Origin: Phallusia mammillata
Lineage: Eukaryota
Direction: 5' to 3'
Assembly (NCBI GenBank): GCA_965637545.1
Contig: OZ281496.1
Span: 21,576,001 to 21,640,000, forward strand
Length of the DNA stretch: 64,000 nucleotides
Part shown: piece by piece, positions 34,701 through 64,000 of the stretch
How the letters are laid out: every line of letters starts with the position of its first letter
Position numbering within the stretch: position 1 is the stretch's first letter
Translations under genes and position numbers: made by a program
The notes under the pieces: generated by a model
Told to the model about the DNA's origin: nothing
Database searches by the model: none
Seen by the model: the letters and a program-made list of their open reading frames with translations, nothing else

Positions 34701-35191
34701 TATTTTTTGCAACGAAATGATATTGGAATTTATAATATAGAATTTTAAATTCATTTATCATTGGAAAATAAGTTAAAGCTGCTTTAGGTTATCTAAAAAC
34801 TTTAACAATTTGTTTGTGTTTAACATTTCACTTTTATGTCGCATAACATTTACTGAACGGTGGCCTTTTTATGCAGATAATTGTTAATCTTTCTGGTGCG
34901 CATATGGATCCAGTAGATTGGCCGAATCCCAAAGTGTTTAATCCGCGAAGATTCATAGACGACAATGGAAAGTTTGTTCCTTCAAAAAAGCTCATCCCGT
35001 TTTCTGTTGGAACACGATTTTGCCTTGGTGAAAGTTTAGCCCGAGCTCAGATCTTTATATTCTTTGTCAAAATCCTTCAGAAATTTCGCGTTACCCCTGC
35101 AAACGGTATGCCACCTGATATCAACGATGAAATTGTGTCTACGGTTACTGCAGCCCGTACATGTGACGTTATGCTCAAACCCCGCAATTAA
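31733..35191 (+). CDS. Cytochrome P450 copy G, intact, ~499 aa
   Basis: Exons 31733-32017, 32145-32290, 32545-32647, 32966-33075, 33489-33598, 33667-33788, 34026-34170, 34487-34650, 34877-35191 (1500 nt, in frame). AGTETSS, ESMR, FSVGTRFCLG. Confidence 0.93.
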
Positions 35192-39000: not shown

Positions 39001-39837
39001 TCCAAATATATTACTGAGCATGCAACATGTGCCAAAACAAACAATTATACCTATTTAGGATTCATTATTTTCTTTCTGCTATTTAAGGATCAGATGGAGT
39101 ACCAGCCATGGCCAAAAAAGAAGAACTGCCGATGACCTGCGCTTTCATCCAAGAATGCATGCGATTTAAAACCCTTTCACCACTCGCTGTTCAGCACAAG
39201 ACAACCGCCACAACTGAAGTTATGGGGCACGTTATACCGAAGGGAACAACGGTAATTCTACTTAAAAAGAGATGTAAAAATATCCAATATGTTTTTCGCT
39301 GTGTGTTTGAAAGATTTTGAGTGGGAATTAAGGGCCATCTTTTTATAGGTCCAGCTGTTTTTTATTATTCGCGTGTAATGTTAAACATTCATTTTCAGAA
39401 AGCTTAAATTTGCAAAGTGTGAGCTACTGATATCTAGAATTCAACATTAGGTGCTTTTGTTCTTTACAGTGCGGATTTGCCACTTTAATGCAATGTTCAT
39501 CGTAATTGCTGTTTGTCTGCAGGTAATTGCAAATCTTTCTGGGGCCCATAAGGATCCAATAGATTGGCCAAACCCAGAAGAATTTAATCCACGAAGATTT
39601 ATAGACGAAAATGGAAAGTTTGTTCCCTCAAAAAAGCTTATCCCGTTTTCGGTTGGAGCAAGATTTTGTCTCGGGGAGAGTCTGGCTAGGGCTGAGATCT
39701 TCATATTCTTTGTCAAAATTCTTCAGAAATTTCGTGTTTCACCCGCAAATGGTGTGCCTCCTGATGTTAATGACGAAATTGTCTCGTTAGTGACAGCTGC
39801 CCGTACCTGTGATGTCAAGCTGGAAAACCGCATTTAA
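36090..39837 (+). CDS. Cytochrome P450 copy H, intact, ~498 aa
   Basis: Exons 36090-36371, 36706-36851, 36912-37014, 37412-37521, 38203-38312, 38377-38498, 38719-38863, 39088-39251, 39523-39837 (1497 nt, in frame). AGSETTS, ECMR, FSVGARFCLG. Confidence 0.93.
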
Positions 39838-43834: not shown

Positions 43835-44700
43835 ATGGAAGTTGTGTCAATGAATACACATTCATCAACTAAATTTTCATCAGATGATTTGTGCGACACG
43901 TTTGGCGAAATCGACATTTATAAATTCGCTACAATTTGTGTACAAAATTCAATAGAGAGAAAAGCTGAATGACTTGGGTTCTCGTGGTGTTGAACTGTTT
44001 GTAACCAATGCCTCCCAAAAAACGAAAATACATATAAGGTATGGAAAGACAGCTGTGCAATACAAACAGAGCCAAAAGTTCGTTACCTATTTGCTTGAGG
44101 TAAAAAAGGGCTAATGGGAAGTAGCAAAGCGTCAGCCAATATCCTGTTTCCTATTACGTACTGCCTGTTATGCAGGCACCCTGCATGCAGCTACTTGCAG
44201 TAAGCTTGAATTCAAACTCTTTGGCTATTAACTAAACTGCCAATGATTGAATACACACATAGTTACCATCAAAACTACGCCAACCAAAAACATTTTACCA
44301 CAAACGTACCTTTGGGGAACACAAAATGTTAGACGTAAAACAACTTTTCACATATCATTGTTTGCAGATGAAACTTAAAACTTTTCAGTAGGTAACCTTT
44401 ACCTACACCTTTTATGTTCGATGATATATACATACGTGACAATCATCCCCTAATTAACCCCTTGCTTGTTATTCTGAACTGCAACGTACGGGCAAGAAAA
44501 CAGATTAATTTGCATTCGCAAGGTAATCAAAAGGACAGGAGTGCAGTATAAGACATGGTGGGTTTATCTCTTAAACCGCCAGATTGTTAACCGCACAAGG
44601 AGTTGTCAACTAATTGGCCTAAAAAAGAACAAGATTGACTGTTCGTGCAAGCAATGTTGCTTTACAGATAGGAGGTGGCTCGGAAGCCGGAACATAAATC

Positions 44701-47700
44701 ATGAAGAAGAGCGCAATACATTTGTTCTGCGTTGTCTTGATAGCTTTTGGTACGCGTCTTTATTAATTTGTTAACTGTAAATTTGTAAATAAAGTTTGCC
44801 TCCGGCGCTCCATAGCACATTTAAAGACATGGCAGCTATGTTTGGGTTCTTGAAATTTCAGAAAAAAAATACTATTTGTAATTTCTTGTCATTTGTTAAA
44901 TATTATTTGTCGAATTTGGAACGTTGTTAGCGTGTATTCAAGACAAGTTTAAAAATTTGATGGATAGATATTCTCGCATAAGTTTAAAGGAGTATTTTGG
45001 ATGTAGCAATTGCGTTAATGAAAATTAATATTTTGGTTTCAATAAACCATGATTGTCACACAGGTTGTACAAAATGTGATGCAATCAAGAAATATGAGGA
45101 CTTTGAAATTCCGGAAACACACCGTACCTGGGCCGGAGACTACAATTCAACTAGTAGAAATCGTCCAATTTACATAGAGCCAGTTTCTGGAGCTCTTGCT
45201 CTCGAAGAATTTTGTTCGGTAAAAACTAATGGCATTTACAATGATACTTTTAATAGCGTTTCTCGAATTGAATTAGTTGATATTTAGATTAGAGACGGCA
45301 ATGATACAATTCTGGGCAACTATGTAGGAAATGGATTGAGCACTGGAATCATAAGAACAGAAAGTTTATCTATCAAGATCGATTGTCAATTGTTCGGCAA
45401 TGGGAGTCGTTTTCACCTGAGAGCTACAGAGTGTAAGCTAATATAATTGTATTTGATAATAAAACTACTGCAAAAAACTAACTGGACAAAAAATACAGAA
45501 ACGAATTTAAGTCCAACGTGTTTTGTTAATATGCAGATGACAAGACCGTATCGTTTTCGAAGACAGTTCTATTAAGGAAAAACGACACATCAACTGTTTC
45601 CTTCAACTATTCAGTATCAAATAATTATGCAATCCAGGAATGGAAATTTAAAAGCGGGACCTGTTGCCAATTTGAGTTGAAATTCAGTGACGTGAATTTG
45701 CCGGGGCAAAACTCTGTGCTAGTAAGTATTTCTACACATATTTGTATTAGGTACACAAGACACGGACTTAAATAGTAGCTTTAATAAAAACCAAATCTGT
45801 TTTAATAAAACGTCTGTATTAATAAAATGAAAACCGTTTACTCTACGTCGCTGGCAATTTGGTTTTTATTAGATATTTGTATTAGTTAGAGAAAAAACAA
45901 CTGTTAAACCTTTTCTCTGTATTTTGAAATATATGTTGCACATTTTCCTTTAAGAAATTCATGTATTGACCAATGCTACAGTTGCTCAACAGTTGCTTAT
46001 GCACCTCAACATTGTTTAGATTCATACGGACATTGACGCAGCTAATGCAGGACGCTGGGCCGGGCCAAATATTACCCGAAACTTTAGAACAATTGGACGA
46101 CAACTCTATGTGCAGCTACAAGGCCTATATGACATCTCAGGAAAATCGAATAAAGCGTTTCAACTCCAAATATCATACGGTAAGTTAGCTTTGTTTCTGA
46201 CAAACATTTTTGATTTAATGTTTGCTGATTTAGATTGCATGGGAAAGATAACGCCGATCCACTGCAGGGCACAACACAATACACCGTAAGTATCTAAATT
46301 ATTTATGAAAGTCTAAAACAACAAATTTGTTCTATTTCTATAATTGAACACCTCTTTTGGCACATTATAAAATTGTAACAATGTTCCTACTCCAAAAAGT
46401 ACGAAAATACCTTCCAAGGTTCGTTCGAACAAACATGTTCAAAACTTGGACATAAAATGCCATTGATTTGAGATTAGTTCGTATACCATATTTTACGAAG
46501 TATCTTGCACAGATACTATCAATGCATTTTTTTCAGGGATAACACTTCCCATGCAAACAAAACAGAGAAAATTCCAACAACCTTGAAGGTGTTCAATGAT
46601 TCATATCACACTACAAAAACATCGGTGGTTGGAAATGTTGTGTATGCTGAAATACGACTGAAAGATGAAAACAGCGGATCCTATGATATATTTGTCAATG
46701 TAAATATTGGCGATAAGATATGGTTGCATGTATATATAATCATAACGGCCTAAGTATACTGTATCACCTAACTGCAATGTTAAACTTTTAGAGCATATTT
46801 TCAAACATTTTACATTATTTGAAACACCAATTCCCACGTTCATTTAATCAATAAGTAAATCATATTAAAATTCAAGTGTTTTCCTGCATAAAGGTATTCT
46901 GTTGGGTTGATGATGAAAATACAAACATAGATGAAAGGTTAATGTATGAATAATGCATGTTTTAGATGCTCGAATGTTCCATAAATGCCACAGCACAAAA
47001 AGCATCGACAGAAGTTCTTTTTGACCAAAAGTAAGTCATGCTCAATGCGCGAATGTTGTGGTTAAGTCATACAGAAATATAATTTGCAGAAACAACTATA
47101 CTGCAAAAGTCACAAGAAACAACCAACCTACATTTGCAACGTTCCAGTTTAGTACTACTCGCTTTAACACGGTTGGGTGGATGGAACTTCAATGCAAAGT
47201 CTCAGTTTGCACGGTAAGGTATTGGGAGTTTGACAAGCGTCTGTTTATTAGTTTGCTGCATATTCTTAGTTGGTGTTGTTTAAACTTCATGGTGTTAATA
47301 TTTAAACAACAATGGCGTTTGAGGCAATCAACAAAATTAAAACATGTCAAAATATCCATCTTTGGATAAATTAGCATTCCCGACCACTGCTTTTGTGCAG
47401 TCGAACAAAAAACTTTACTCTTTTACCATGTGACTTTCAATTTGTTAATGAAAACTGCTTTATGGTGGTTAGGCAAATGAGTGCGGATACGAAAGTGCAA
47501 ACATACAAGTTGTGTCAGCAAGGATGTATGTCTTACCGGCACAAGGTATTTGTTGTTTAGGTTGCAAGTAAAGTAATGTTGAGGATACAAGCGGGGTAAC
47601 AAACAGTACTTGCAAAGATTATTCAACATTCAAGCCTTTTAACACGGGGTATATTACTGTGCCAATTTTGTCAAAATAATTATAACTTCGCGTGCCAAAC

Positions 47701-48017
47701 ATATTTGTGTGTAACTATTGCTTGAATGAGTTGATAAAAACAGTCACCAGAAAGCAGACCATATCGTACCTGTAGGCTAGGTTTAGTATTACATCATGAC
47801 AAACGCAAAACAAACATTGATAACAGTTCAAACTATATCAAAAAGTACTTGAATTCGAACTGCTAAACTATTTGGCGCGCCATGAATAACCACCTCTGTT
47901 GCCGACCCCTGAATTCAATGCGTATGTTTTCTGTTAATATCCTATACTGCTGTTACAGAGACCGACACATGTACTAGTACGCCCGAAGCTGGAAAAATAT
48001 CAACTGAAATGCTGTAG
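44701..48017 (+). CDS. CUB-CUB-ZP-C-like glycoprotein copy 1, stop codon just before the TM (~409 aa; ancestral frame runs to 48176)
   Basis: Exons 44701-44749, 45064-45218, 45288-45432, 45537-45721, 46020-46179, 46234-46285, 46537-46699, 46966-47030, 47090-47213, 47473-47545, 47959-48017, in frame. Signal peptide MKKSAIHLFCVVLIAFG; CUB-like EWKF...FELKFSDVNLP...AFQLQISY; ZP-C-like TLKVFNDS...VGNVVYAEIRL...FATFQFSTTRF...LQCKVSVC. TAG at 48015 aligns to TAC in copies 2 and 3. Confidence 0.8.
45751..45872. mobile_element. 122-bp insertion with 13-bp direct repeats and an internal inverted repeat
   Basis: Flanked by atatttgtattag (45738-45750 and 45873-45885), absent from the same intron in copies 2 and 3, and carries taataaaaaccaaat ... 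atttggtttttatta. Confidence 0.7.
47590..47911. mobile_element. Old hAT-like remnant in the last intron of CUB/ZP copy 1 (ortholog at ~55129-55428 in copy 2, absent in copy 3)
   Basis: Right TIR gttgccgacccctg at 47898-47911 and 55415-55428, with tggc(g/a)cgc-type subterminal motifs. The left end is uncertain. Confidence 0.55.
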
Positions 48018-49262
48018 TTTATTGGCATTACAGCATCTGTTGTTTTTGTCATGGCACTCGCTTGCGTATTGGTAAAGGTGAAAGTGTTGTGTTGCCAGAA
48101 AAATAACAACAATGTGTTGGACAACAACGTGGAAACAAACAATGAAGATGCGGTGTACTATAATGTGACATTGTAGGAAAAGTGTATTACGTGTTCTTCT
48201 TGCACTTCCTGATTTGTGCTAACAGTAATAGTCCAGCCGTTGGTTAGTTTGTTTTATTCAGCACCAACAGTAATGTAATGTAAACGTGGCTTGACGTAGC
48301 GTGATTCTACGCCCAACCGAAATCAAACCGAATAGAATAACGTCACTTCAAAACCGCAGAATATATACACAGATCAAAACAACATAATTAGTCATACGTG
48401 AACAACATCCCGTCACTGGTACGGATGCCCACAACGTTCTCATCCTGTTCCACGCAATAACGAACAATTACATGACATAGCCACTTGTGGTTCCCACGTT
48501 ATAAGTCACATAGCATATGAAAGTTACGTAATGGAAAAGTTACAAGTCATGGCAGCTCTACCCATGACGTGAAAAATATTACATCATTTATGTTACAACA
48601 TGACTGCTATTTTTTAGTGACATGTTTGTTTTTTTCAAAAAAGAAGACAATTAGAACTTTATTTTAAACAAGAAACTTGAGAGAAAAAAATCACGCGAAA
48701 GGCACCTTTATATGAGGGGGCCTAATGACAGAATTTATATAAGCAGAAAGGCTCGTTTAAAGTGCATTGAAATGTATACCAAACTAAAGTAACTAATAAA
48801 ACTGACAGTTTAAAGCAGAATACCAATACAATAATTTGTAGCAGCCATCGACAAACGTCAAATTCGACAATTGCAAACAAGATTTCACATCAACACGTGG
48901 CTGTGTATCAGTTGTCACTATTTCAAGAAAACCAGCATTACACATCATAAGTTGGGTGCAATCTTTTCATTTATCAACTCCTTAACTTAAACGTATTCAT
49001 ATGAAAAAAATAAACATTTTGAACAAGTTACGTAAAAGTTTTCTTCCGCCTTGTGACCGTTTCTATGAAGACCAAAGCAGCGCGTTGACAGTTGTATGTT
49101 TTAGTAGTGCACTGGCGTCGTGCACTCTTTCCATTTTTTGTTATTTTTGTAATCATTGTTAGGACGATCATTACCGACATTTCACAATTGTCAAAATAAA
49201 CAATTTATTTGTAAGATGACTATTTAGTGGTGTGCAAGTTTTGTGTCTTGGGCTATCTAGGG

Positions 49263-49828
49263 CAGGGGTGTCAAACTCGTGGGGTTCGGGGGCCACATTG
49301 CAGTTTGGAAATTATGCCGAGGGCCGCATGTGATTTTTAATCTAGTTTATACACTTAAACAAACTTTTCGCTACGACGGCAGCATTACAGATCCTTATTT
49401 CACCAACAGCTGCCCATTATCTGCTGGTTTTTGTTTTAAAATTACAGATGTAAAGAAAAAGGTTTATATTTTATATATGCCATCTATTAAAAAGCCCAGA
49501 TTGATTTCCAGCTTGATGCACAGATTGAGCTGCACAATGTGAAGATCAGTTTTAACTGTTTATTACGTCACAATCTATATTGTGACGCTTTTTGTACCTG
49601 TTTTTTTGCATTGTTTGTACACAATAGGCCTACAAAAAGTCTGGCAGGTTTAATTACTGTCGTTTCTATTCATAACATATGAATTTGTATTTATAAATTA
49701 AATTTCGGTAAATGTCTGTTTAAATAATAGCTTTCACTTTGAAAAGTAGTATAATTAGATAAAAATCTGACAAAATACTATATCTGTTGTTGACTGTTCG
49801 TGGGCCGCATTGGAAGGCTTCCTGCCTG
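49263..49828. mobile_element. hAT-like MITE in the copy 1/2 spacer
   Basis: Left TIR caggggtgtcaaactc, eroded right end, flanks atctaggg / atctaggc (7/8). The matching site (~56427 atctaggg) is empty in the copy 2/3 spacer. Confidence 0.75.
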
Positions 49829-50475
49829 ATCTAGGCAAGGGTACCGTAAACCAAAATAAGTGAAAACAATGGATTAGTGGTTTGCAACTTTAATACAGTA
49901 ACGAACCCCTTTTAGAACAATTCCTGGGATCGCCATACTTTTACCTACTATTTTAAAAACATGAAAATCCTTGCAATTCTACTGTTTGCAAACCCCCGGA
50001 ACCATATCACTAATCCCTTGGGGTTTCGCCAATGCTAGGTTGGAAACTTCGTGAGTAAACAAATTTTAAAATGTTTCCTTTAACAAAACGCATTGAAACA
50101 ATTTGGTAAAAACTGTGGCTGTTAGAGTGAATAACACAGAAATAGACATCTTGTTCAAACGCAGCGGCAAACGGGGCAATTTTGTTCTGAATTCATCGGA
50201 TGCCAGTTGAAATAAAATGAAACAGAGTTAGAAGTTCATGTACGAAAAGACCAGTTGACAATATGTTAATGAAAGAGTGGAACTACCTGTTGTTGTAAAT
50301 TTATAAATGTTGTATTTGTGATATACGATAACTATAACACTATTTTTAGGTTTGTTTTGTTGCACTTGAAAACACCAGAAAATATATAGGCACCTTTTAT
50401 TTTGTTCAGAGCATGTTAACTTGTCGACTGTATCAAACGTTTGCGGGCAAATTCATGAGAATCGTCACAATATAT

Positions 50476-50714
50476 TAGTAGTTCTCAAACTGTGCGTCGC
50501 GACGCCCTGTTGCGTCGTTTCAATTTTCCAAGGGCGTCGCAGAATATTTCCATTTCGTGGCTTTTTATGGTTGTTTTTGTGGTTTGTTTTTGTTGTATCA
50601 ATAAACACAGCTTCAATAATAAGGTTACTCATTAACTTTTATTTGCTGGTGCGTCGCAAGATTAGAAAACTTTTCCAGAGGTGTCGCAACAAAAAAAAGT
50701 TTATGTGATAATTG
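50476..50714. mobile_element. Degraded hAT-like MITE
   Basis: Starts tagtagttctcaaactgtgcgtcgcgacgccc with repeated gcgtcg(c) motifs and ends gtgtcgcaacaaaaaaaagttt. Absent at the matching site near 57170. Confidence 0.55.
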
Positions 50715-52241
50715 TCTTCTATTTTTAATATATCTTAAGTGAAAATATTATCAAAATAGAATTACTGTTTGCAACCTAACTTCTTTAAACGTTTTTTGTC
50801 AAATATGTGTTTGTTTTTCATGAACAAGTTTCTCACTGACAACCGATTAACGAATAGGTGCTTTTACAAACCAATAAACTTTTATTCATACAGTATTTCT
50901 AATATATCATTAACTGTAATATATCATATTCCATTACATAAATAGGGTGCTGCTAGTAAAAACAGGTTAGAAAACCACTAATTTAACCCTTGCGCCATTT
51001 AAGCGAATTTATAATTCTGAAATTGGTATATCAATCAGTGTGCAACACATTACGATGGTGGTACATGAACTTCCATTTTGGACACTTGGGGAAGGGAAAG
51101 AATTTGTATAACCACTGTCGTATGAGGCAAACAAGACAGCTAATAAGCGTCGTGACCAGGATTCGAACACAACTAACAAACGCTGTGCGTCAGACGAAAC
51201 ATAAAAATAGCCTTCATTGCAGCTGATGAAGTTTAATTATGTTTTCTTTTGGTGTAAAAAAAGTAAAACAAAGCAACATCTGAAATCAATCTTTCCATTG
51301 AAAGTTAAATTGATGAAGGTTTAATCCACCAAAGAGCACATATTAACAATTCTCAGACCTAAATATAAATTTGTTCACTCAAACAACCTCATTTCGTTTT
51401 TTTATCGTAACGGGACTTTGCCTTACGCCACTAAATCTAGTGTCGTATTCCAGAAGTTCGCTACAATTTGTGTGCAACTTTTATTGGTTCGCAAAATCGA
51501 ATCTCGTATGGCTTGGGTTCACGCAAGTGGCGTTGAACCGTTGGTACCCGATGCGTCGCTATAATACGCACATCCAAGGCATGGAAAGGTGCCGGGCGTT
51601 TTCAATAGGCCACGAAATTGGTTATCTATACTTAGTGTAAAAAGGCTAATGGGAAGTAGCAAAGCATAAGCTAATTTCCTGTTTCCTTTTACGGTCGTAC
51701 AGCCTATCATGCGGGCACTGTGCACGCAGCTACTCGCAATTAGCTTGAATTCAAACTGTTTGGCTATTAACTAAACTTCTGATAATGAAATACACAATAG
51801 TTACCATCAAAACTACGCCAAACAAAAACATTTTACCACAAACATACCTTTTGGAAACACATGTTTTTAAACGGAAAGCAACCTTTTTAAATCTCATTGT
51901 TTACAGATGAAACTTAAAACGTTTTAGTAGGTAAACGACATTTACCTACACCTTTTTGTGTCCGATGATATATACATACGTGACAATCATCCTCTAGTTA
52001 ACCTCTGGCGTGAGTTCCTGAACTGCAACATACGGGCAAGAAAACAGATTAATTTGCATTTGCAAGGTAACCAAAAGGACATGAGTGCAGTATAAGTTAT
52101 AGTGGATTTATCTCTTAAACCGCCAGAACATTAACCGCACAAGGAGTTGGTTAACTGATTGGCCTAAAAAAGAACAAGATTGCTGATTGTTCGGGCAAAC
52201 AATGTTGCTTAACGGATAGAAGGTGACCTGGAACATTCATC

Positions 52242-55200
52242 ATAAAGAAGAACGCATTACATTTGTTCTGCGTTGTCTTGATAACTTTTGGTAAGCGTTT
52301 TATTTAATTTGTAAACTTATTTGTGAAGTTTATGTCTGTCGCTTTATTGCACTTTTTAACAAATGTCAATCATGGAAAACGCCTTTTTTGTCATTTGTTG
52401 AACATGAATTGTCCAAGAGGAATGCATTATAAAGTGTTATTTGAGTCTATTAAAAAAGCTGTTTTTAATTGTGTATTATTGTGTGAAAAACGATTTGGAG
52501 TAAGCATTATGTGAATGATAATTAATAACATTTTTCGGTTTGGATAAAACATGATTGTTACACAGGTTGTACAAAATGTGATGCAATCCAGAAATATAAG
52601 GACATCCTAATTCGTGATACATTCCGTAGTTTCAGCGTCTACTATGAATCAACCAGCACAAGCCGTCCAATTTACGTTGAGTCGGTTTCTGGGGGTCTTG
52701 CTCCAGAACAATTGTGTAAGGTAAAAACTCGGTATTTTTATGATACAAATAGATCCTTAACCAAGTTCAAAGCTTTGATGAGTCTACAACAACAAAACAC
52801 GTTTATTTTTTTCATATTTTAGTTACTTTCACATTTGCTTTCAGTTTGCAAACGGTTATTTATGCTAAGGTTTTCATTTAAATGCTTTAATCCATGCCTC
52901 CTCCGAAAAATATAATTTATGTGATATTCAGATTGTAGATGCAAATGGAACGGTATTGGGCAACTACCATGGAAACGGATTAAGTACGGGTATCCTAAAA
53001 ACAGAAAGTGTATCTATCAAGATCGATTGTCAGTTGTCCGGCAATGGAAGTCGTGAGAGCTATCGTGAGAGCTTTCTCCTGAGAGGTACAGAATGTGAGC
53101 CAATATATTTGTATTTGATAATAAAACTACTGCAAAAAACTAGCTGGACAAAAACTACAGAAACGAATTTAAGTCGAAAGTGTTTTTTGTTATTGTGCAG
53201 ATGACAAGACCGTATCGTTTTTGAAGACAGTTCCATTAAGAAAAAAAGACACATCAACTCTTTCCTTCAACTATTCAGTATCAAGTAATTATGCAATCCA
53301 GGAATGGAAATTTAAAAGCGTAACCTGTTGCCAATTCGAGTTGAGACTCAGTGACGTGGATTTGCCTGGGAAAAACTCCGTGCTTGTAAGTATTTTTAAA
53401 CGTGTTTGTATTAGTATGAGAAAGTGTTAAACCTTCTCTCTGTATTTTGAAATATATTTTGCACATTTTGCTTTATAAAATTCCTGTCTTGACCAATACT
53501 ACAGTTGCTCCAGGGGTAAAGAATTGTTTTTAAACATCTCAACATAATTTAGATTCATACGGACATTGACACAGCCAATGCAGGACGATGGGCCGAGCCA
53601 AATATTTCCCGAAACATGACAACCATTGGACGACATCTCTACGTGCAGCTACAAGGTCTATATGACATCTCAGGAGAATCGACTAAAGCGTTTCAACTCC
53701 AAATATCATATGGTCAGTTAGCTTTCATTTCTGACAAACATTTTTTTTTACTTAATGTTTAGATTGCATGGGAAAGATAACGGCGATCAACTGCAGTGCA
53801 CAACACGATACACCGTATGTATCTAAAATATTTATTAAAGGGTGAAACTGCAAATTTGTTCTTTTTCTGTAATTGAATACCTCTGCTTGCACATTACAAA
53901 ATTGTAACAAAGTTACTACTACAAAAAGACCTTCCGAAGCTTGTTGGAAAGAACATGTTCAAAACTTGGCAGTAAATTCCGGTGATTTTAGATAAGCCCG
54001 TATGCCACATGTTACGAAATGTCTTGCACATATACTATCAATGCATTTTTTTCAGGGAAGACGCTTCTCATGAAAACAAGACAGAAAAAATGTCAACAAC
54101 CTTGAAGGTGTTCAATGATTCACAGCACACTACAGAAACATCGGTCATTGGAAATGTTGTGTATGCTGAAATACGACTGAAAAATGAGAACAGCGGATCC
54201 GATGATATATTTGTCAATGTAAACATTAGCGATAATATATAGTTACATAATATAAGTTACATTAATAATAACGGCCTGAGTATTGTAATGTTAAACTTTT
54301 AGAACATATTTTTAAACATTTACGTTATTTGACACACCAAAGTTGCTTTGATAAAAAAGTAAATCATATCAAAATTAAAGTGTTTTCCTACATGATGATA
54401 TTTTGTTTGGATGTTGATGTCAATAGAAATAAGATATCAAAGGTTAGTGTATCGATAATACATGTTTTTAGATGCTCAAATGTTCCGGAAGTACCACAGC
54501 ACCAGAAAGAACGACAGAAGTTCTTTTGACCAAAAGTAAGTCATGCTTAATGATGCGAAAGCTACGGTTCAGTCATACAGAAATATCATTTACAGAAGTA
54601 ACTATACTGCAAAAGTCACAAGAAACAACCAACCTGCATTTGCAACGTTCCAGTTTAGTACTACTCGCTTCAACACGTTTGGGTGGATGGAACTTCAATA
54701 CAAAGTCTCAGTATGTGCGATTAAGGTATTGTGAGTTATGACAAGTGTCTGTTTATTAGTTTGCTGCATATTCTTAGTTGGTGTTGTTTAAACTTCATGG
54801 TGTTGAAGTTTTTATTCAAACATTAATGGCGTTTGAGGCAATCAACAAAATTAAAATATGTCAAAATATCCTTCTTGGGATAAATTAGCATTCCAAATTT
54901 TCTACCACTGCTTTCGTGCAGTTTAAAAAATCAACTTTACTCTTTTACAATGTGACTTTCAATTTGTCCCATTCTAAAACAGTTTAATATCGCAATGAAA
55001 ACTGTTTAGGCAAAAGAGTGCGGATGCGAAAGTGCAAACATACAAGTTTTGTCAACAAAACTGTGGGCCGGACCTAGACAAGGTATTTATTGTTTTGAGT
55101 GCAAGTAAAGTAATGTTGAGGGATTACAAGCGGGGTAACAAACAGTACTTGCAAAGATTAATCAACATTCAGGCCTTTGATATGTTGTATATTACTGTGC

Positions 55201-55631
55201 CAATTGTGTCAACATAATGATAGTTTCGCGTGCCAACATTTTTGTGTGCAAAAATTGTTTGAGTGAGTTGATAAAACAGTCCCCAGAAAGCGTACCTGTC
55301 GGATTATTTTATTATTACATTACAACAAACGCAAAACAAACATTGATAATTCAAATTATACCAAAAGGTGCTTGAAACTCCTGAGTTACTTGGCGTGCCA
55401 TGAATAACCACTCTGTTGCCGACCCCTGAATTCAATGCGTATGTTTTCTGTTTATATCCTATACTGCTGTTACAGAGACAGACACATCTACAAGTACGCC
55501 CGGAAAAAAAAAATCGACTGCAATGCTGTACTTCTTTGGCATCACAGTAGCTGTCATTTTTGTCATGGCACTCGCTTGCGTATTGGTAAAGGTGAAACAG
55601 TTGTGCTTTTAGAAAAATAACAACAAAGTGA
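52242..55631 (+). pseudogene. CUB-CUB-ZP-C-like copy 2, pseudogene
   Basis: Exons 52242-52290, 52566-52720, 52932-53094, 53201-53385, 53553-53712, 53763-53814, 54056-54218, 54472-54535, 54596-54725, 55010-55082, 55476-55631. ATG changed to ATA, upstream acceptor ag changed to gg, exon 8 is 64 nt instead of 65 (frameshift), conserved LQCK changed to LQYK, and there is a tail frameshift. Confidence 0.8.
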
Positions 55632-58430
55632 AGGACAACAACGTGGAAACAAAAAATGAAGAAGCAGTGTACTATAATTTGACCTGATTGCTATTTTTTC
55701 TGTGACATAACAAAAAACTTTTAGAAAAAAACTTTTACATTTTTTATATTTGTTACTGGTTTGTCGCAAACGAACTATTGAAACACAAAACATTGTTTGT
55801 TTTCCAAAAAAACAAGACAATTAGAACTTTATTTTAAAAGGAACTTGAAAGAAAAAACTTAACGCAAAGGCACCTTTATGAGGGGCCCTAATGACGGAAT
55901 TTACAAAAAAGTAAGCAGAAAAGACATGTTGAAAGTGCATTGATGGTAACCAATAAAACCGACAATTTAAAGCAGAAAACCGATACAATTATTTGTAGCA
56001 GCCATCGACAAACGTCAAATTCAAACAAGATTTTACATCAACACGTTAAGATCGGCGTGTGTCAATAGTCCCTATTATTAGAAAACCACTAAAAAAATAT
56101 GCATTGTAAGTTGGGTGCAATCTTTTCATTTATCAACTCCTCAAACGTATTCATAAAAAAATAAAAATTTTGAACAAGTCACATAAAAGTTTTCTTTCGC
56201 CTTGTGATCCTTTCTATAAAGACTAAAGGAGTGGTTTTAAACGGGGTGACAGTTGTATCTTTTAGTGGTGCCGCCGAGCACTTCTGCCATTTTTTATCAC
56301 TTTTGTAACCATCGTTAGAGATTATTACAGACATTTCACTCCAATTGTTAAAATAAACAATCTACTCTTAAGATGGCTAGTTAGTGGTGCGCATGTTTTG
56401 TGTCTTAGGGCCTAAGACTTAGACTATCTAGGGTGCCGTAAACTAAACAAAGTGAAAACAATGGATTAAAACAGTTGTTTCTAACTTTAATACAGTAACG
56501 AACCCCTTTTAGAATTTCAACAATTCCAGGGACCGCCATACTCAATTACCTATTATTTTAAAAACATGAAAATCCTTGCATTTTTTCCCGTTTGCTAACC
56601 CCATGGAACCATGTCACTTATCCCTTGGGGGTCCGACAATGCTAGGTTGAAAACCTCGTGATTAAACAAATTTTAAAACGTTTTCTTTGTCAAAATGCAT
56701 TAAAAACATTTAGGGAAAGACTGTGGCTCTTAAGGTGAATAACACAGAAAAGAAGGTCTAGCTTAAACGCAGCAGCAAAGGGGACAATCGTGTCCTTGAT
56801 TTCAAAGGATGTCAATTGAAATACAATAAAACAGAGTTAGAAGTTCATGTGCGTATGGACCCGTTGACAATATGTTAATGAAAGCGGGTGACACTACCAG
56901 TTGTTGTGAATTTATAAATGCTAACACTATTTTTGGGTATGTTTCGTTGCATTCAAAAACATCAAAAAAATATATAAGCACCTTTTATTTTGTTCAGAGC
57001 ATGATAACTTGTCGACTATATCAAACATTTGCGGGCAAATTTATTTTATGGATACTATAAGAATCTCTCTCTGTTAGCGTAAATTAGTGTCTAAATTGAA
57101 CTATTAATCTACGCTACGGCCTAGTGGTTCCCAACCAGGGCGCCGTTCGAAAAGGTCATGGTGTCGTCACAGTATATGACAATTTTCTTCCATTTTAATA
57201 TACTTTAAGTTAAAACAATATCAAAATAGAAGTGATGTTTGTAACCACACTTCTTTCAACTTATTTTGTCTAAAAATGTGTTTGAGTGTTTTTCATGAAC
57301 AAGTTTCTCACTGACATCTCATTAATGATTAATTATTTTACAAATTAACAAACTTTCAGTATTGACGCATGTTCAATCCACCAAACAGTATCATATCAAC
57401 AAATCTCATACCTAAATGGAAGTTTGTTCACTCAAACAAACTCATTTCGATTTTTATTGTCACGGGGCGTTGGCTTTGCAGCAAAATCCACGAAATTGTC
57501 TCGTTGGTTACAGTTACCCGTGCATTTTTGTTGTAGTAAAATTTGGGTTATTTATGACTGCAATGCATACACATTTATTAAGTACATTCCTGTAGATAAT
57601 TTTGCGCAACACCCGTATTCCAGAAGTTCGTTACAATTTGTGTACAAGTTTTAATCGAATGCAAAATTAAATCTGCGTGTAGCTGGGTTCACACAAGTGG
57701 TGTTGAACTGTTGTTCCCACAATGCTTTGCTAAAATACGCAAATACTCGAGGCACATAAAAGGTGCCGATCGTTTATTTCAGGGCCAGAAAAGTTCGTTA
57801 TATACTTGTTTGAGGTTAAAAAAGATCAACGGGAAGCAACAAAGCAGAAGCGAACTTCCTGTTTCCTTTTACGTTTATGCAACCTATTGAACCCATATCG
57901 TGCACGCAGCTTTTTGCGAATAGCTTAGATTCAAACTGTTTGGCTTTTAACTAAAATGTGCCAGAAAACAACATCAAAAAATACCGTACTCAATACAAAC
58001 AAAAGATAACACAACAAAACTACCAACAAAATCACGCTCACTAAAATTAGTTCAACACAAAGTTACCTTTCGAAAACACATAATGTTAAATCGAAAACAA
58101 CTTTTTAATTGACTTTGTTTACAGATTTAACTTGAATCTATTTATCTACGTCCGATGAATAATGCATATATGACAATCATCCCCTAATTAACCCCTTGCT
58201 TGTTATTCTGAACTGTAAAATATGGACAAGAAAACAGATTAATTTGCATTTGCAAGGTGACCAAAGGGACAGGAGTGCAGTATAAGACATGGTGGGTTTA
58301 TCTCTTAAACCGTCAGATCGTCAACCGCACAAGGAGTTGTCAACTAATTGGCCTAAAAAAGAACAAGATTGCTGATTGTTCGTGCAAGCAATGTTGCTTT
58401 ACAGATAGGAGGTGGTTTGGAACATTCATC

Positions 58431-61400
58431 ATGAAGAAGAGCGCAATACATTTGTTCTGCGTTGTCTTGATAACTTTTGGTACGCGTCTTTATTAATTTG
58501 TTAACTGTAAATTTGTAAACAAAGTCTGCGCTTTATAGCACACTTAAATACCTATCAGCTATGTTTGGGTTCTGAAAATTTCAGAAAAAAAATACTATTT
58601 GTAATTTCTTGTCATTTGTTAAATATTATTTGTCGAATTTGGAACGTTGTTAGCGTGTATTCAAGGCAAGTTTAAAAATTTGATGGATAGATATTCTCGT
58701 ATAAGTTTAAAGGAGTATTTTGGATGTAGCAATTGCGTTAATGAAAATTAATATTTTGGTTTCAATAAACCATGATTGTCACACAGGTTGTACAAAATGT
58801 GATGCAATCAAGAAATATGAGGACTTTGAAATTCAGGAAACACACCGTACCTGGGCCGGATACTACAATTCAACTAGTAGAAATCGTCCAATTTACATAG
58901 AGCCAGTTTCTGGAGCTCTTGCTCTCGAAGAATTTTGTTCGGTAAAAACTAATGGCATTTACAATGATACTTTTAATAGCGTTTCTCGAATTGAATTAGT
59001 TGATATTTAGATTAGAGACGGCAATGATACAATTCTGGGCAACTATGTAGGAAATGGATTGAGCACTGGAATCATAACAACAGAAAGTTTATCTATCAAG
59101 ATCAATTGTCAATTGTTCGGCAATGGGAGTCGTTTTCACCTGAGAGCTACAGAGTGTAAGCTAATATAATTGTATTTGATAATAAAACTACTGCAAAAAA
59201 CTAACTGGACAAAAAATACAGAAACGAATTTAAGTCCAAAGTGTTTTGTTAACATGCAGATGACAAGACCGTATCGTTTTCGAAGACAGTTCCATTAAGA
59301 AAAAAAGACAGATCAACTCTTTCCTTCAACTATTCAGTTTCAAATAATTATGCAATCCAGGAATGGAAATTTAAAAGCGTAACCTGTTGCCAATTTGAGT
59401 TGAGATTCAGTGACGTAAATTTGCCGGGGAAAAACTCTGTGCTAGTAAGTATTTTTAAACATATTTGTATTAGTTTGAGAAAGCCAAGTGTTGAACCTTC
59501 TCTCTGTATTTTGAAATATATGTTGCACATTTTCCTTTATAAAATTCTTGTATTGATCAATACTACAGTTGCTCCGCGGTTGAAGAATTGTTTTTAAACA
59601 CCTCAACGTTGTTTAGATTCATACGGACATTGACACAGCCAACGCAGGACGATGGGCCGAGCCAAATATTACCCGAAACTTTACAACAATTGGACGACAA
59701 CTCTATGTGCAGCTACAAGGCCGATATGACTCAGGAGAATCGACTAAAGCGTTTCAACTCCAAATATCATATGGTCAGTTAGCTTTGTTTCTGATAAACA
59801 TTTTTTATTTAATGTTTGCTGATTTAGATTGTATGGGAAAGATAACGGCGATGGACTGCAGGGCACAACACAATACACCGTAAGTATCTAAAACATTTAT
59901 TAAAGTGTGAAACTGCAATATTTTATGTAATTAAATACCTCTGTTGGAACATAACAAAATTGTAACAATGTTCCTACTCCAAAATGTACAAAAAGACCTT
60001 CCAAAGTTGGTTCGAACAAACATGTTCAAAACTTGGGTAGTAAATGCCGGTGATTTTAGATCAGTCCGTATATCACATTTTACGAAATGTCTTGCACATA
60101 TACCATCAACGCATTTTTTTCAGGGAAGACACATCCCATGCAAACAAAACAGAAAAAATTCCAACCACCTTAAAGATGTTCAATGATTCACAGCACACTA
60201 CAGAAACATCGGTGGTTGGAAATGTTGTGTATGCTGAAATACGACTGAAAAATGAAAACAGCGGATCTGATGATATATTTGTCAATGTAAATATCCCAAC
60301 TGTAATGTTAAACTTTAAGAGCATATTTTCAAACATTTTACATTATTTGACAAACCAATTCCAAAGTTACTTTAATAAAAATGTTTCCTATGATGATATT
60401 TTGTTTGGTTGTTGATGCCAAGAACAAAGATATCAAAGGTTAATGTATCAATGCATGTTTTTAAGATGCTCAAATGTTCAATAAGTACCACAGCACAAGA
60501 AATAGCGCCAGAAGTACTTTTTGACCGAAAGTAAGTCATATATAATGTCGCGAAAGCTATGATTCAGTGATACAGAAATATCATTAAGCAGGAGCAACTA
60601 TACTGCAAAAGTCACAAGAAACAACCAACCTACATTTGCAACGTTCCAGTTTAGTACTACTCGCTTCAACACGTTTGGGTGGATGGAACTTCAATGCAAA
60701 GTCTCAGTTTGCACGAATAAGGTCTTGAGAGTTTCAAAAAGTGTCTGTTTGTCTGTGTGCAGGCATATTCTTAGTATGTGTTGTTTAATGTTTTGTATAA
60801 CAACAAACGTTTACTCTAAAACGAGGCGCTTTTCATGGTGTTTATATTCTAACAACAATGGCGTTTAAGACAATCAACAAATTTAAAACAACTCATAATA
60901 TCCTTATTTGCAGACATCAGCATTCTCGATTATTGCTTTCGCGCAATCGAAACAATTTTCAACTTAAATCTTTTACAAGCTTGCTTGCATTCAATTTATA
61001 TCATTCCAAACCAGCCTCATAGTGCCACTTATTGCTATTAAAACTACTTAATTGTGTATAGGCAAATGACTGCGGACATGAAGGTGCAAACAGACAAGTT
61101 GTGTCAGAAAAGCTGTGGGCTGGACCTGTACAAGGTAATTATGATTTTTGTGTAAGGAAGAGAGTGTTACCGGTACAAGCCAAATAAAAAAATACAATTC
61201 ATTAATGTATACATTCAAATATCTTTATACATAGTTTAATACTGTTTCACTTTAATTACTGCGTTTTATTTACGCTAATACCCTATACCGCCGTTACAGA
61301 CACCGACACATCTACAAGTACGCCTAAAACTGGGGGAATTCCGCCCACAATGCTGTACTTTATTAGCATCACAGCAGGTGTCATATTTGTCATCGTACTC

Positions 61401-61538
61401 GCTTGCGTATTGGTAAAAATGAAACAAAGCGATCGTTTGTGCTTCAAGAAAAAGTACATGTTGGACATCAATGTGGAAACGCAAGAGGCAAAAAAAGTGA
61501 TCCAAAAGAACGAGGAAACAAAGAATAAAAATGCCTAG
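58431..61538 (+). CDS. CUB-CUB-ZP-C-like type I membrane glycoprotein copy 3, intact, ~470 aa
   Basis: Exons 58431-58479, 58787-58941, 59011-59155, 59260-59444, 59617-59773, 59828-59879, 60124-60286, 60466-60530, 60592-60721, 61062-61134, 61300-61538 (1413 nt, in frame). Signal peptide, many NxS/T sequons, TM MLYFISITAGVIFVIVLACVLV, basic cytoplasmic tail. Confidence 0.82.
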
Positions 61539-62039
61539 TTGTGATTTAACACAAATATGACTGTTGTTTTAATTGTTCTTTCGTTTTTCGTAGTTGCATG
61601 ACAAAACTAAAAAAAATTAGCAGCATTTTTTACTCTTTTGTATTTCTATCGGTAGCGGCATATGAAAATCAAATAAAACAGCAAATAATCTTTTTATGCA
61701 AATAAGGAGCTTAAATGAGCCATCGAAGAAAAGGTTACACCAAAGGTTTTTGCATGACTGGACTAATAAAAGAACGTATGAGTGACAGAAATAAAAAAGC
61801 ATTCAAACGATCGACTGAAGTAAAATAAGTTTACTTAAATCAGCAACAGTTTAAAGCAATTAACAATGCAACCCGTGCATAGCTTAAAGCAGCTGGTAAT
61901 AAGCATAGCAATTGAAGAACATTTATTTATGTTGCAATTTGCATGCCCGCCAAAATAATAGGCTTTGAAAGAAAGGTACCCTTTCATAAAAAGCTTTGAT
62001 TCAATGATAGTTCAGGCAAAACTTCGTCGAAGCAAAACG

Positions 62040-64000
62040 ATGGCTGGAAGTTTAAGAAATCTTGTGACGATTCTGGTCTGCTTTAGAACTGGTAAGTCCT
62101 TCAGCTACTTGGCGAAAATAAGAATAGTGAGACAGTTTAAAATTGCAAACTTTCAATGCTTTTGCTGAAACAAAACTTTTGTTTTATGTATACTTAACGG
62201 TTTAGTTAGTTTGCTTCCAAATGCAGTAACAATGACCGTTTAACTCCAAACTATACTTTGAGAAAATGTGTATTAGTCAATAAATCAAAGAGTAAGAATA
62301 ACTATTTAAAAATAACTGTAATATGTTTAAGCCTTGTCGGAAGACACAGCGTGTAGAAGAGGTGATGTTCGGATCGTTACAATAACATCGAACCCAACAA
62401 GTCATGAACAAAGTTTTACGTCAAAGCATCAAGATCGCCATGTATCTGTTGTTCCCATATCAGGAAAACTTGCAACACACGAATTTTGCATTGTAAGTTT
62501 AGTTGCAATCTTTTCCTTGCCAATATCCTTTAAACGTTTTTTATACTAAAAACACAAAAACTAAAGCGGGCACAAAGCCATAAGCAAAGCAAGAATTTTA
62601 AACCAAGTAGCCTACATGGAATTTTATTCTATCATTTAAAATATGAGACCTAGACTAAATTAGTTTCAAAACGTCACTTCAATAAGGCATAAAATCATGT
62701 ATTAAGGCTTGTTTTTAGGTGAAAGATTCAAATGGGAAAAGGATAGAAAAGTACGTTGACGATGGTCTACAAACCGGAGTTGTTAGAGTAAATACTTCAA
62801 GAATGGACGTAGTGTGTGAAGTGAACAGCAGCCGGACCCGCTTTGTTCTTAAATTTGGCGGATGTAAGTTTCAAACAATGCTAGTTAAAGGTTTTAAATA
62901 TGAAGGTTAAAAGGTTATATTGATTCGACTAACTATGTTAACAGACCTTAGAGGGAACCGAATTCACCCAGACTAAAATAGGTTTTTTGATAATGTCAAA
63001 TGTTGCCTTCATGGTGTTTATGAACAGAAGTAAAGTATCTGTGATGACAAAATTAGGTGTTTATAGATCGCACCTTCAGTAAAGCTGTCGCCCGGCGAAA
63101 ACGCATTACATCTGGTAAGTACACAAACTACATGTCAAATGAATGGATAATTCCGAGCAAAACAGCATGCAACTTCTCCTTGACGTTTCTATACCTCGCA
63201 CTCCCTTCCCGTTGTGACATACTACTGGTAAGTTTTTACACGTGTTTGACATTTTAAAAAGTTAAAATGTATGAAGCATCAGAAACAAACACATTTGTCA
63301 GACCAAAGTTACCTTGTACTGAATATTCGCTGGCATTTTGACTTTACATTTTTACATAAGGAAGGTTCTATCCATTTGCCGTACCAAACAATAATCTTTA
63401 GCCCCAGTGGCAATTAGTTTTTTAAATCTAATCTAATCACTTTTTATAGATTCGTTCTGATGATAACTGTTCAAACGCATTACGATGGGACACTAACCGC
63501 CAAATAGGACACTTTAGTGGAAGGAAACTGACTCTTCAACTGCAGTCATATGGAGAGAACAAAACAGCTGATAAACAAAAAGCACAAGGATTTGAGCTTA
63601 AAATCAATAAGCACTGTAAGTCACGACTTTCAAAACTAATAATCTACGATTCTGTCATGTCCAAAAATTGAGCTTTGCTTGTTTGTAAATTCTCAACCGA
63701 AAAGGAGTTTTAATTATAATTATACTTTAATTCTAATGTTTCATGCATTTTTTTAAAAACATATGATGTGACAAAAGTTTTTTGTCGTTACAGCTTGTTT
63801 ACCAAAGAAAACAACGGTAAAATGCAAGAAAACTGTGAACGTTAGGTGAGAGTTTTAAATCACATCTGATTTAGTAATCCAAAGCCATTTGCTTAAACAT
63901 ACAAACAAATCGTTACTTTTTCATAGTTTCGGTGACGAAGATTTGCGCAGACTTAGTGTTTCAATCAGAAATACACTCTACATTACGACAGGCAAAACAT
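62040..64000 (+). CDS. Divergent fourth paralog of the CUB/ZP-like family, truncated by the window end
   Basis: Exons 62040-62091, 62332-62492, 62719-62863, 63067-63227, 63450-63615, 63794-63845, 63927-end. Same phases as copies 1-3 and identical 145-nt and 52-nt exons. Peptides align (VKDSNGK..KY..DGLQTG; FSKAV..RK..TS..NY..NEW..C.F.L.F..LP; QLQ..GFELKI; C..K.T..C). Signal peptide MAGSLRNLVTILVCFRTALS. Confidence 0.8.

What the first reader, a model, noticed from the sequence alone, without database searches (positions are those of the whole stretch)
44701..64000. Tandem family of CUB-CUB-ZP-C membrane glycoproteins that appear to lack ZP-N and the furin site
Only about 32 residues (DCMGKITPIHCRAQHNTPDNTSHANKTEKIPT) separate the end of the second CUB-like domain from an IHP-like TLKVFND that opens a ZP-C-like domain, and the flanking introns are too short to hide a ~100-aa ZP-N. 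An EHP-like KLWAGPV precedes the TM, but no RxK/RR cleavage site does. Established: ZP-N drives polymerisation and occurs alone, stand-alone ZP-C is considered rare, and the betaglycan ZP-C binds TGF-beta-family ligands. Inference: a non-polymerising surface receptor or adhesion family, distinct from CUZD1/DMBT1-type proteins with a full ZP module. This is the best candidate for an undescribed system in the window.
Basis: partly seen in the sequence, partly recalled or inferred. Interest (0 to 1): 0.72.

Follow-up and report, generated by a model that had tools for sequence, protein, structure and literature searches.

The report
Sea-squirt membrane genes lacking ZP-N
A sea-squirt genome holds a short row of related membrane-protein genes whose filament-forming "ZP" part seems to have lost its front half; this state is already described in nematodes, only one of the three close copies is intact, and no RNA was found, so it is a modest curiosity and not a new system.

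Summary
The stretch holds four same-strand paralogs. Three are close copies (c1, c2, c3). The fourth, g4, is older and runs off the window's end. Each close copy has 11 GT-AG exons with the same intron phases.

Only c3 (58431-61538) is intact, at 470 aa. c1 has a TAC-to-TAG stop four codons before the membrane span. c2 has lost its start codon, has a 1-nt deletion in exon 8 and has a Cys-to-Tyr change.

About 32 residues lie between the second head module and a ZP-C-like region. Introns 5 and 6 (54 and about 245 nt) are too short for a ZP-N. There is no furin motif before the membrane span.

- **ZP-C:** exon 9 alone matches Pfam ZP-C (positions 86-125 of 133, E 0.011).
- **CUB:** could not be tested on half-domain exons; it rests on motifs and exon phases.
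- **Whole protein:** the spliced protein has no reference, so it was neither folded nor scanned whole.
- **Selection and expression:** dN/dS of about 0.4 shows past purifying selection. Four transcriptome assemblies hold no transcript.

Standalone ZP-C proteins without cleavage sites are already known from nematodes (Weadick 2020). Earlier scan notes list CUB-CUB-ZP arrays elsewhere in this genome, and none mentions ZP-N loss. Verdict: a new variant of a known kind, of moderate to low interest.

The parts
58431..61538 (+). c3, the only intact copy: 11 exons, 470 aa. Exons: 58431-58479, 58787-58941, 59011-59155, 59260-59444, 59617-59773, 59828-59879, 60124-60286, 60466-60530, 60592-60721, 61062-61134, 61300-61538.
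   Evidence: All introns are GT-AG and the frame is open from ATG to TAG. Exon positions are shared with c1 and c2.
58431..58479 (+). c3 exon 1: start codon and signal-peptide-like hydrophobic leader (17 aa)
   Evidence: Read from the translation. No signal-peptide predictor was run.
58787..59155 (+). c3 head module 1 (exons 2-3, 99 aa). It is CUB-like by motif only, is bounded by phase-1 introns and is split by a phase-0 intron.
   Evidence: There is no Pfam or PDB match on the half-domain exons.
59260..59773 (+). c3 head module 2 (exons 4-5, 113 aa). It is CUB-like by motif only and has the same phase pattern as module 1. The g4 copy keeps a C-D-x-L-x-I-R-x-D-D motif across the mid-module intron.
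   Evidence: There is no Pfam or PDB match.
59828..59879 (+). c3 exon 6: a 52-nt mini-exon encoding a Cys-x8-Cys linker. The same length and Cys spacing occur in g4 (63794-63845).
60124..61134 (+). c3 ZP-C-like region (exons 7-10, about 130 aa after a 15-aa linker). It ends in the EHP-like motif KLWAGPV.
   Evidence: Exon 9 (60592-60721) matches Pfam PF00100 ZP-C at positions 86-125 of 133, E 0.011. Exons 7, 8 and 10 give no match alone.
61353..61421 (+). c3 membrane span within exon 11, followed by a 38-aa basic tail
   Evidence: Kyte-Doolittle 19-residue mean of 2.97, peaking at residues 410-432
44701..48190 (+). c1: same 11 exons, 93.7% identical to c3 over exons 1-10. The open frame ends at 409 aa.
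48015..48017 (+). c1 nonsense codon TAG where c2 and c3 have TAC (Tyr), four codons before the membrane span
52242..55700 (+). c2: a pseudogene copy with the same exon layout
52242..52244 (+). c2 start codon changed to ATA. There is no in-frame upstream ATG after the preceding stop.
54472..54535 (+). c2 exon 8 is 64 nt instead of 65. One T is missing from a T run near 54524, which shifts the frame.
54699..54701 (+). c2 exon 9: a conserved ZP-C cysteine is replaced by Tyr
62040..64000 (+). g4: an older paralog, 25-38% identical to c3 in the head exons. Seven exons are visible (62040-62091, 62332-62492, 62719-62863, 63067-63227, 63450-63615, 63794-63845, 63927-64000+). The phases match c3's, and the gene is cut by the window end.

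Best explanation
This is a young tandem cluster of type I membrane glycoprotein genes derived from the CUB-CUB-ZP (CUZD1-like) stock. That stock is expanded in this sea-squirt genome.

**Layout of the encoded protein**
- signal peptide
- two head modules of about 100-115 aa (CUB-like by motif)
- a Cys-x8-Cys linker from a 52-nt mini-exon
- a ZP-C domain with an EHP-like strand
- a membrane span and a short basic tail

The ZP-N half and the furin site are missing in all three close copies, so the loss came before their duplication.

**Inferred mechanism.** ZP-N is the polymerising element. Cutting at the furin site normally releases the EHP 'lock'. A protein with neither should stay on the cell surface as a closed, non-polymerising ZP-C stalk that presents the head modules as a binding surface (receptor or adhesion role).

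**State of the copies.** Only c3 can make this protein now. c1 would give a secreted, anchor-less form or nothing. c2 is dead.

**Shown:** gene structure, lesions, absence of room for a ZP-N, absence of the furin motif, a partial ZP-C match and past purifying selection.

**Inferred:** the CUB fold, the EHP role, surface retention and any function.
For: - **Gene models:** 11 GT-AG exons and a 470-aa open frame in c3, with the same exon layout in c1 and c2.
- **No room for a ZP-N:** introns 5 and 6 are 54 and 244-251 nt in all copies.
- **ZP-C:** exon 9 matches Pfam ZP-C at profile positions 86-125 of 133, E 0.011 and 0.015. It is the only family hit for any exon.
- **No cleavage site:** no R-x-x-R or R-x-K/R-R before the membrane span. 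The motif definition and the EHP/IHP lock come from PMC8391237.
- **Membrane span:** a hydropathy peak at residues 410-432.
- **Selection:** dN/dS is 0.40 for c2-c3 (Fisher p 1.3e-6) and 0.27 for module 2 (p 0.005). Exons 7 and 9 lie at about 0.2-0.5.
- **Older paralog:** g4 keeps the exon phases, the 145-nt exon 3 and the 52-nt exon 6.
- **Precedent:** nematode standalone ZP-C proteins also lost their cleavage sites and evolve under stabilising selection (PMC7456536).
Against: - No CUB match was found for any head exon, and the two modules show no profile similarity to each other.
- The ZP-C match is below Pfam's cut-off. Junk intron translations gave chance hits at E 0.04-0.2 in the same kind of scan.
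- Exons 7, 8 and 10 match nothing alone.
- Two of the three close copies are broken.
- No transcript contig lies on c3 in four RNA-type assemblies from four studies.
- Exons 8 and 10, which include the EHP-like part, evolve at dN/dS of 1 or more.
- No relative of exon 7 was found among 1.84 billion representatives, so nothing outside the window supports the model.
- The whole spliced protein was never scanned or folded.
Confidence: 0.55

Rival explanations
1. The cluster is decaying. Loss of ZP-N was one step in the death of a CUZD1-like gene, and c3 is intact only because the duplicates are young. No product works today.
For: c1 has a nonsense codon. c2 has lost its start, has a frameshift and has lost a conserved Cys. 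No transcripts were found in four assemblies. c1-c3 dN/dS is 0.71 and not significantly below 1. Exons and introns diverge at similar rates in several segments.
Against: All three copies share the ZP-N-less layout, and c2-c3 still shows dN/dS of 0.40 (p 1e-6), so selection acted after the loss. c3 keeps 11 exons, all splice sites and 470 codons open. The four assemblies are of unknown tissue and stage.
Confidence: 0.25
2. The protein is still processed and joins ZP filaments made by full-length CUB-ZP paralogs. A trypsin-like protease would cut at the single Arg nine residues before the EHP-like motif, and the ZP-C-only subunit would act as a chain end or as a membrane anchor of the filament.
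For: c3 has a single Arg (…ANR|QVVSEKLWAGPV…) where ZP precursors carry their cleavage site. Ascidian HrVC120 is cut by a trypsin-like protease and not by furin (PMC9265791). Weadick proposes that free ZP-C domains may regulate unlinked ZP-N domains (PMC7456536). Scan notes report many full CUB-CUB-ZP genes in this genome (unchecked).
Against: The Arg is not kept in c1 or c2, which have Ile there. There is no evidence that the gene is expressed together with any partner.
Confidence: 0.12
3. The gene model is wrong. Either a ZP-N is encoded by exons I did not find, or head module 2 (exons 4-6) is itself a ZP-N and the protein has an ordinary full ZP module.
For: No RNA data support the splice junctions. 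Module 2 has no CUB match. Module 2 plus exon 6 carries four cysteines, the number found in a ZP-N.
Against: Module 2's cysteines are spaced CC…(71)…C-x8-C, unlike a ZP-N, whose first Cys sits near the start of the domain (my own knowledge of the family). Modules 1 and 2 share the phase 1-0-1 exon pattern, with the mid-module intron just before an I-x-x-D motif. g4's module 2 carries C-D-x-L-x-I-R-x-D-D, a CUB hallmark. Open stretches in introns 6 and 9 gave only chance Pfam hits. Intron 6 is too short.
Confidence: 0.08

Closest known systems
CUZD1 / DMBT1-type CUB-ZP membrane proteins of vertebrates, and the CUB-CUB-ZP-TM arrays noted elsewhere in this sea-squirt genome
   Same: Same order of parts: signal peptide, two head modules of about 110 aa each encoded by two exons, a ZP region, a membrane span and a short tail. 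The genes are arranged in tandem and exchange blocks between copies.
   Different: There is no ZP-N: about 130 aa of ZP region against about 245-270 aa for a full module. There is no furin site. The CUB identity of the heads is unproven here.
Nematode standalone ZP-C proteins (T01D1.8, F46G11.6 and CUTL-19 subfamilies; Weadick 2020, PMC7456536)
   Same: A ZP-C kept after loss of ZP-N, a retained signal peptide, general loss of R/K cleavage sites and evidence of purifying selection.
   Different: The loss here is independent and lies in a chordate lineage. This ZP-C sits behind two large head modules and keeps an EHP-like strand and a membrane span. The nematode proteins are small, and are either truncated before the EHP or GPI-anchored.
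Betaglycan and endoglin (membrane-bound, non-polymerising ZP co-receptors)
   Same: Type I membrane proteins whose ZP region stays on the cell and serves binding and not filament formation. Betaglycan's ZP-C binds ligand.
   Different: They keep both ZP-N and ZP-C and have orphan domains as heads, not CUB-like ones. No sequence relation to them was detected here.

Membership tests
ZP module proteins (full ZP-N + ZP-C) | A ZP-N domain of about 100 aa with four conserved cysteines, upstream of ZP-C | tested here: not met
   Only about 32 residues lie between head module 2 and the ZP-C-like start. Introns 5 and 6 are 54 and 244-251 nt. No Pfam ZP-N hit was found on any exon or on open intron stretches. 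Caveat: exon-sized pieces give Pfam little power.
ZP module proteins (full ZP-N + ZP-C) | A ZP-C domain | tested here: inconclusive
   Exon 9 alone matches PF00100 at positions 86-125 of 133, with 16.2 bits and E 0.011, below the 24.6-bit cut-off. Exons 7, 8 and 10 give nothing alone. PDB sequence profiles gave only chance hits. The whole domain could not be scanned.
ZP module proteins (full ZP-N + ZP-C) | A consensus furin site (R-x-x-R or R-x-K/R-R) between ZP-C and the EHP | tested here: not met
   A pattern search of c1, c2 and c3 found none in that region. The motif definition comes from PMC8391237.
ZP module proteins (full ZP-N + ZP-C) | An external hydrophobic patch followed by a membrane span | tested here: inconclusive
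   The membrane span is clear (hydropathy 2.97 at residues 410-432). The EHP is only a motif resemblance (KLWAGPV in c3 and c2, diverged in c1), and this exon evolves at dN/dS of 1 or more.
CUZD1-like (CUB-CUB-ZP-TM) | Two CUB domains | tested here: inconclusive
   No Pfam CUB hit and no PDB CUB chain was found for any half-domain exon. Support comes only from motifs, the phase 1-0-1 exon pattern and g4's C-D-x-L-x-I-R-x-D-D.
CUZD1-like (CUB-CUB-ZP-TM) | A complete ZP module after the second CUB | tested here: not met
   See the ZP-N row.
Standalone ZP-C proteins (kind described by Weadick 2020) | ZP-C present and ZP-N absent, a signal peptide kept, a cleavage site usually absent, and purifying selection | tested here: met
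   This is a likeness of kind only. Descent from the nematode subfamilies was not tested and is unlikely.

The most novel reading that the evidence does not exclude
This is the first chordate lineage of ZP-C-only surface proteins. A CUZD1-like gene lost ZP-N and its cleavage site but kept the IHP/EHP lock and the membrane anchor. That would make a permanently closed ZP-C stalk that either presents fast-changing heads as a receptor, or caps and anchors filaments built by the genome's many full-length CUB-ZP paralogs.
Probability: 0.15. Interest if true: 0.6.

Novelty: new variant of a known kind. Interest (0 to 1): 0.37.

Why it matters
ZP-C was long thought never to occur without ZP-N. The nematode cases showed that it can, and raised the question of what a free ZP-C does. 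A second, independent loss in a chordate would help answer that. Here the loss comes with the cleavage site also gone, while the EHP-like strand and the membrane anchor are kept. This would give a natural construct for testing whether ZP-C can serve as a binding stalk or as a regulator of other proteins' ZP-N domains. The weight of the finding is limited: one intact gene, no expression data and no fold evidence.

Tried and rejected
- **Pfam, exon by exon.** c1, c2, c3 and g4 exons gave only the exon 9 ZP-C hit.
- **PDB sequence searches.** Exon profiles and single g4 exons gave only chance hits.
- **Module 1 against module 2.** hhalign, with and without g4, found no similarity.
- **Big protein search.** Exon 7 (54 aa) returned 0 hits. 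A 54-aa query needs about 45-50% identity to score, so this does not prove there are no relatives.
- **Public contigs.** Exact look-up of two window ORFs found nothing, so this genome is not in that collection and g4 could not be followed past the window end.
- **RNA.** No listed holder of the stretch is on record as RNA. Laying contigs of four runs at 80% likeness gave only a 33-nt stray match.
- **g4's exon 7.** Its visible 24 residues are not significantly like c3's exon 7. Whether g4 keeps a ZP-N therefore stays open.
- **Joined reference.** A two-part reference was not accepted.
- The spliced proteins have no reference. Whole-protein Pfam, the word search for full-length relatives, structure prediction and fold search were therefore not run. 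The word search was also not run on exons, because it only sees proteins of 0.55-1.75 times the query length.
- **Rejected idea.** I considered exon-specific hypervariability of c2's head. The divergent block includes introns 1-2, so it is a block exchange.
Full report
**What is in the stretch.** A self-comparison shows three repeats of about 6.5-7.5 kb from 43.9 kb onward. A tblastn of the c3 protein finds the same exon series three times on the + strand and nowhere else in the window.

I built c3 by hand from the DNA. It has 11 exons, every intron is GT-AG, and the frame is open for 470 codons from ATG at 58431 to TAG at 61536-61538. Mapping the c3 exons onto the other repeats gives the same layout. 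The intron phases are 1, 0, 1, 0, 1, 2, 0, 2, 0, 1 in order.

A fourth gene, g4, starts at 62040. It is only 25-38% identical in the head exons. It has the same phases, the same 145-nt exon 3 and the same 52-nt exon 6, and it runs off the window after 24 codons of its exon 7. Positions 1-44 kb hold an unrelated array of cytochrome P450 genes. Notes from this scan say the genome is a sea squirt's.

**State of the copies.**
- **c3** is intact.
- **c1** carries TAG where c2 and c3 have TAC, at 48015-48017, four codons before the membrane span. It could at best make a 409-aa protein without an anchor.
- **c2** has ATA in place of the start codon, with no upstream in-frame ATG. It lacks one T in exon 8, which shifts the frame. 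It also has Tyr in place of a conserved cysteine in exon 9.

So the 'family' in this window is one working gene, one truncated gene, one pseudogene and one partly seen older paralog.

- Introns 5 and 6, on either side of exon 6, are 54 and 244-251 nt in all copies. A ZP-N of about 100 aa cannot be hidden there.
- Open stretches inside introns 6 and 9 gave only chance Pfam hits.
- No R-x-x-R or R-x-K/R-R lies between the last ZP-C cysteines and the membrane span in any copy. The definition of the furin site is taken from PMC8391237.
- KLWAGPV lies 20 residues before a strong hydrophobic span at residues 410-432.

- Of the exons of all four genes, the only ones that matched any Pfam family were c3's and c1's exon 9. 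They matched PF00100 (ZP-C) at profile positions 86-125 of 133, at E 0.011 and 0.015.
- The score is below Pfam's cut-off, and intron junk gave E 0.04-0.2 hits to unrelated families. The number alone is therefore weak.
- That the single hit is the predicted family, in the right part of the profile, in the exon just before the EHP-like motif and the membrane span, makes a ZP-C likely. I put it at about 0.9.
- The CUB reading of the two heads could not be tested. There was no Pfam or PDB match on half-domains, and the two modules show no profile similarity to each other.
- What supports CUB is indirect. Each module is a phase 1-to-1 unit split by a phase-0 intron just before an I-x-x-D motif. 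Both end in a hydrophobic F-x-L-x-I/A pattern. g4's module 2 carries C-D-x-L-x-I-R-x-D-D across the intron.
- That these motifs mark CUB is my own knowledge, not a test. I put CUB at about 0.8, and the chance that module 2 is a ZP-N at well under 0.1.

**Evolution.** The copies are block mosaics:
- c1 and c3 are 96-100% identical from exon 1 to exon 3, introns included.
- c1 and c2 are closest in the 3' part.
- c2 is an outlier from intron 1 to exon 3, introns included.

This is block exchange, not exon-specific hypervariability.

Across exons 2-10, dN/dS is 0.40 for c2-c3 (Fisher p 1.3e-6), 0.27 for module 2 (p 0.005) and 0.48 for exons 6-10 (p 0.04). Exons 8 and 10 are at or above 1, and c1-c3 overall is 0.71, which is not significant. 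All three copies share the ZP-N-less layout, so the loss came before their divergence, and selection acted on the shortened protein for at least part of that time.

**Expression and relatives.**
- No run on record as RNA holds the stretch.
- Contigs of four RNA-type assemblies from four studies lie nowhere on c3 except for a 33-nt stray match. Tissue and stage are unknown, so this shows no expression there and does not show silence.
- Exon 7 found nothing among 1.84 billion representatives.
- The genome's own ORFs are not in the contig index.
- No outside sequence therefore bears on the model.

**Comparison with what is known.**
- ZP precursors are held closed by the IHP-EHP pair until they are cut at the furin site. 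ZP-N then drives polymerisation (PMC8391237).
- Weadick (2020) showed that standalone ZP-C proteins exist in nematodes. They arose at least twice by ZP-N loss, keep their signal peptides, mostly lack R/K cleavage sites and evolve under stabilising selection. He suggested that other phyla might have them too (PMC7456536).
- The present genes fit that kind but differ in context. They have two large head modules in front, and they keep an EHP-like strand and a membrane span behind.
- They fail two defining features of CUZD1-type proteins: a full ZP module and a cleavage site.
- Earlier notes of this scan list several CUB-CUB-ZP-TM arrays 16-18 Mb away and on another piece of this genome, and a 'headless' ZP paralog. 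None mentions ZP-N loss. I could not read those loci, so whether they keep a ZP-N is untested here.

**Verdict.** The fold assignments are only partly tested, and the functional reading is inference. The most likely picture (0.55) is a CUZD1-derived surface protein with a closed, uncleaved ZP-C stalk and no ability to polymerise, now carried by a single intact gene in a cluster that is partly decaying. It is a new variant of a known kind. Interest is moderate to low until a fold, a transcript or conserved orthologs are shown.

Noticed in passing
window 1-44000: This is a tandem array of about nine CYP2-like cytochrome P450 genes in mixed orientation. Terminal haem-binding exons include 9340-9648(+), 15282-15572(-), 34871-35191(+) and 39451-39837(+). 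They match Pfam PF00067 at E 2e-29.
   Followed up: partly
window 57624-61600 against 43922-48350 and 51454-55850: The three copies are a block mosaic. c1 and c3 are 96-100% identical from exon 1 to exon 3, introns included. c1 and c2 are closest in the 3' part. c2 diverges by 23-38% from intron 1 to mid exon 3. This points to unequal exchange or conversion with other paralogs.
   Followed up: partly
window 59828-59879 and 63794-63845: A 52-nt mini-exon encoding Cys-x8-Cys is kept in length, phase and Cys spacing between c3 and the distant paralog g4. It may be a stapled tail of module 2 or a remnant of the first strand of a lost ZP-N.
   Followed up: no
window 61539-62039: Only about 500 nt separate the c3 stop codon from the g4 start codon, against 2.7-4 kb between the other copies. 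g4's promoter must be very compact or must overlap c3's 3' end.
   Followed up: no
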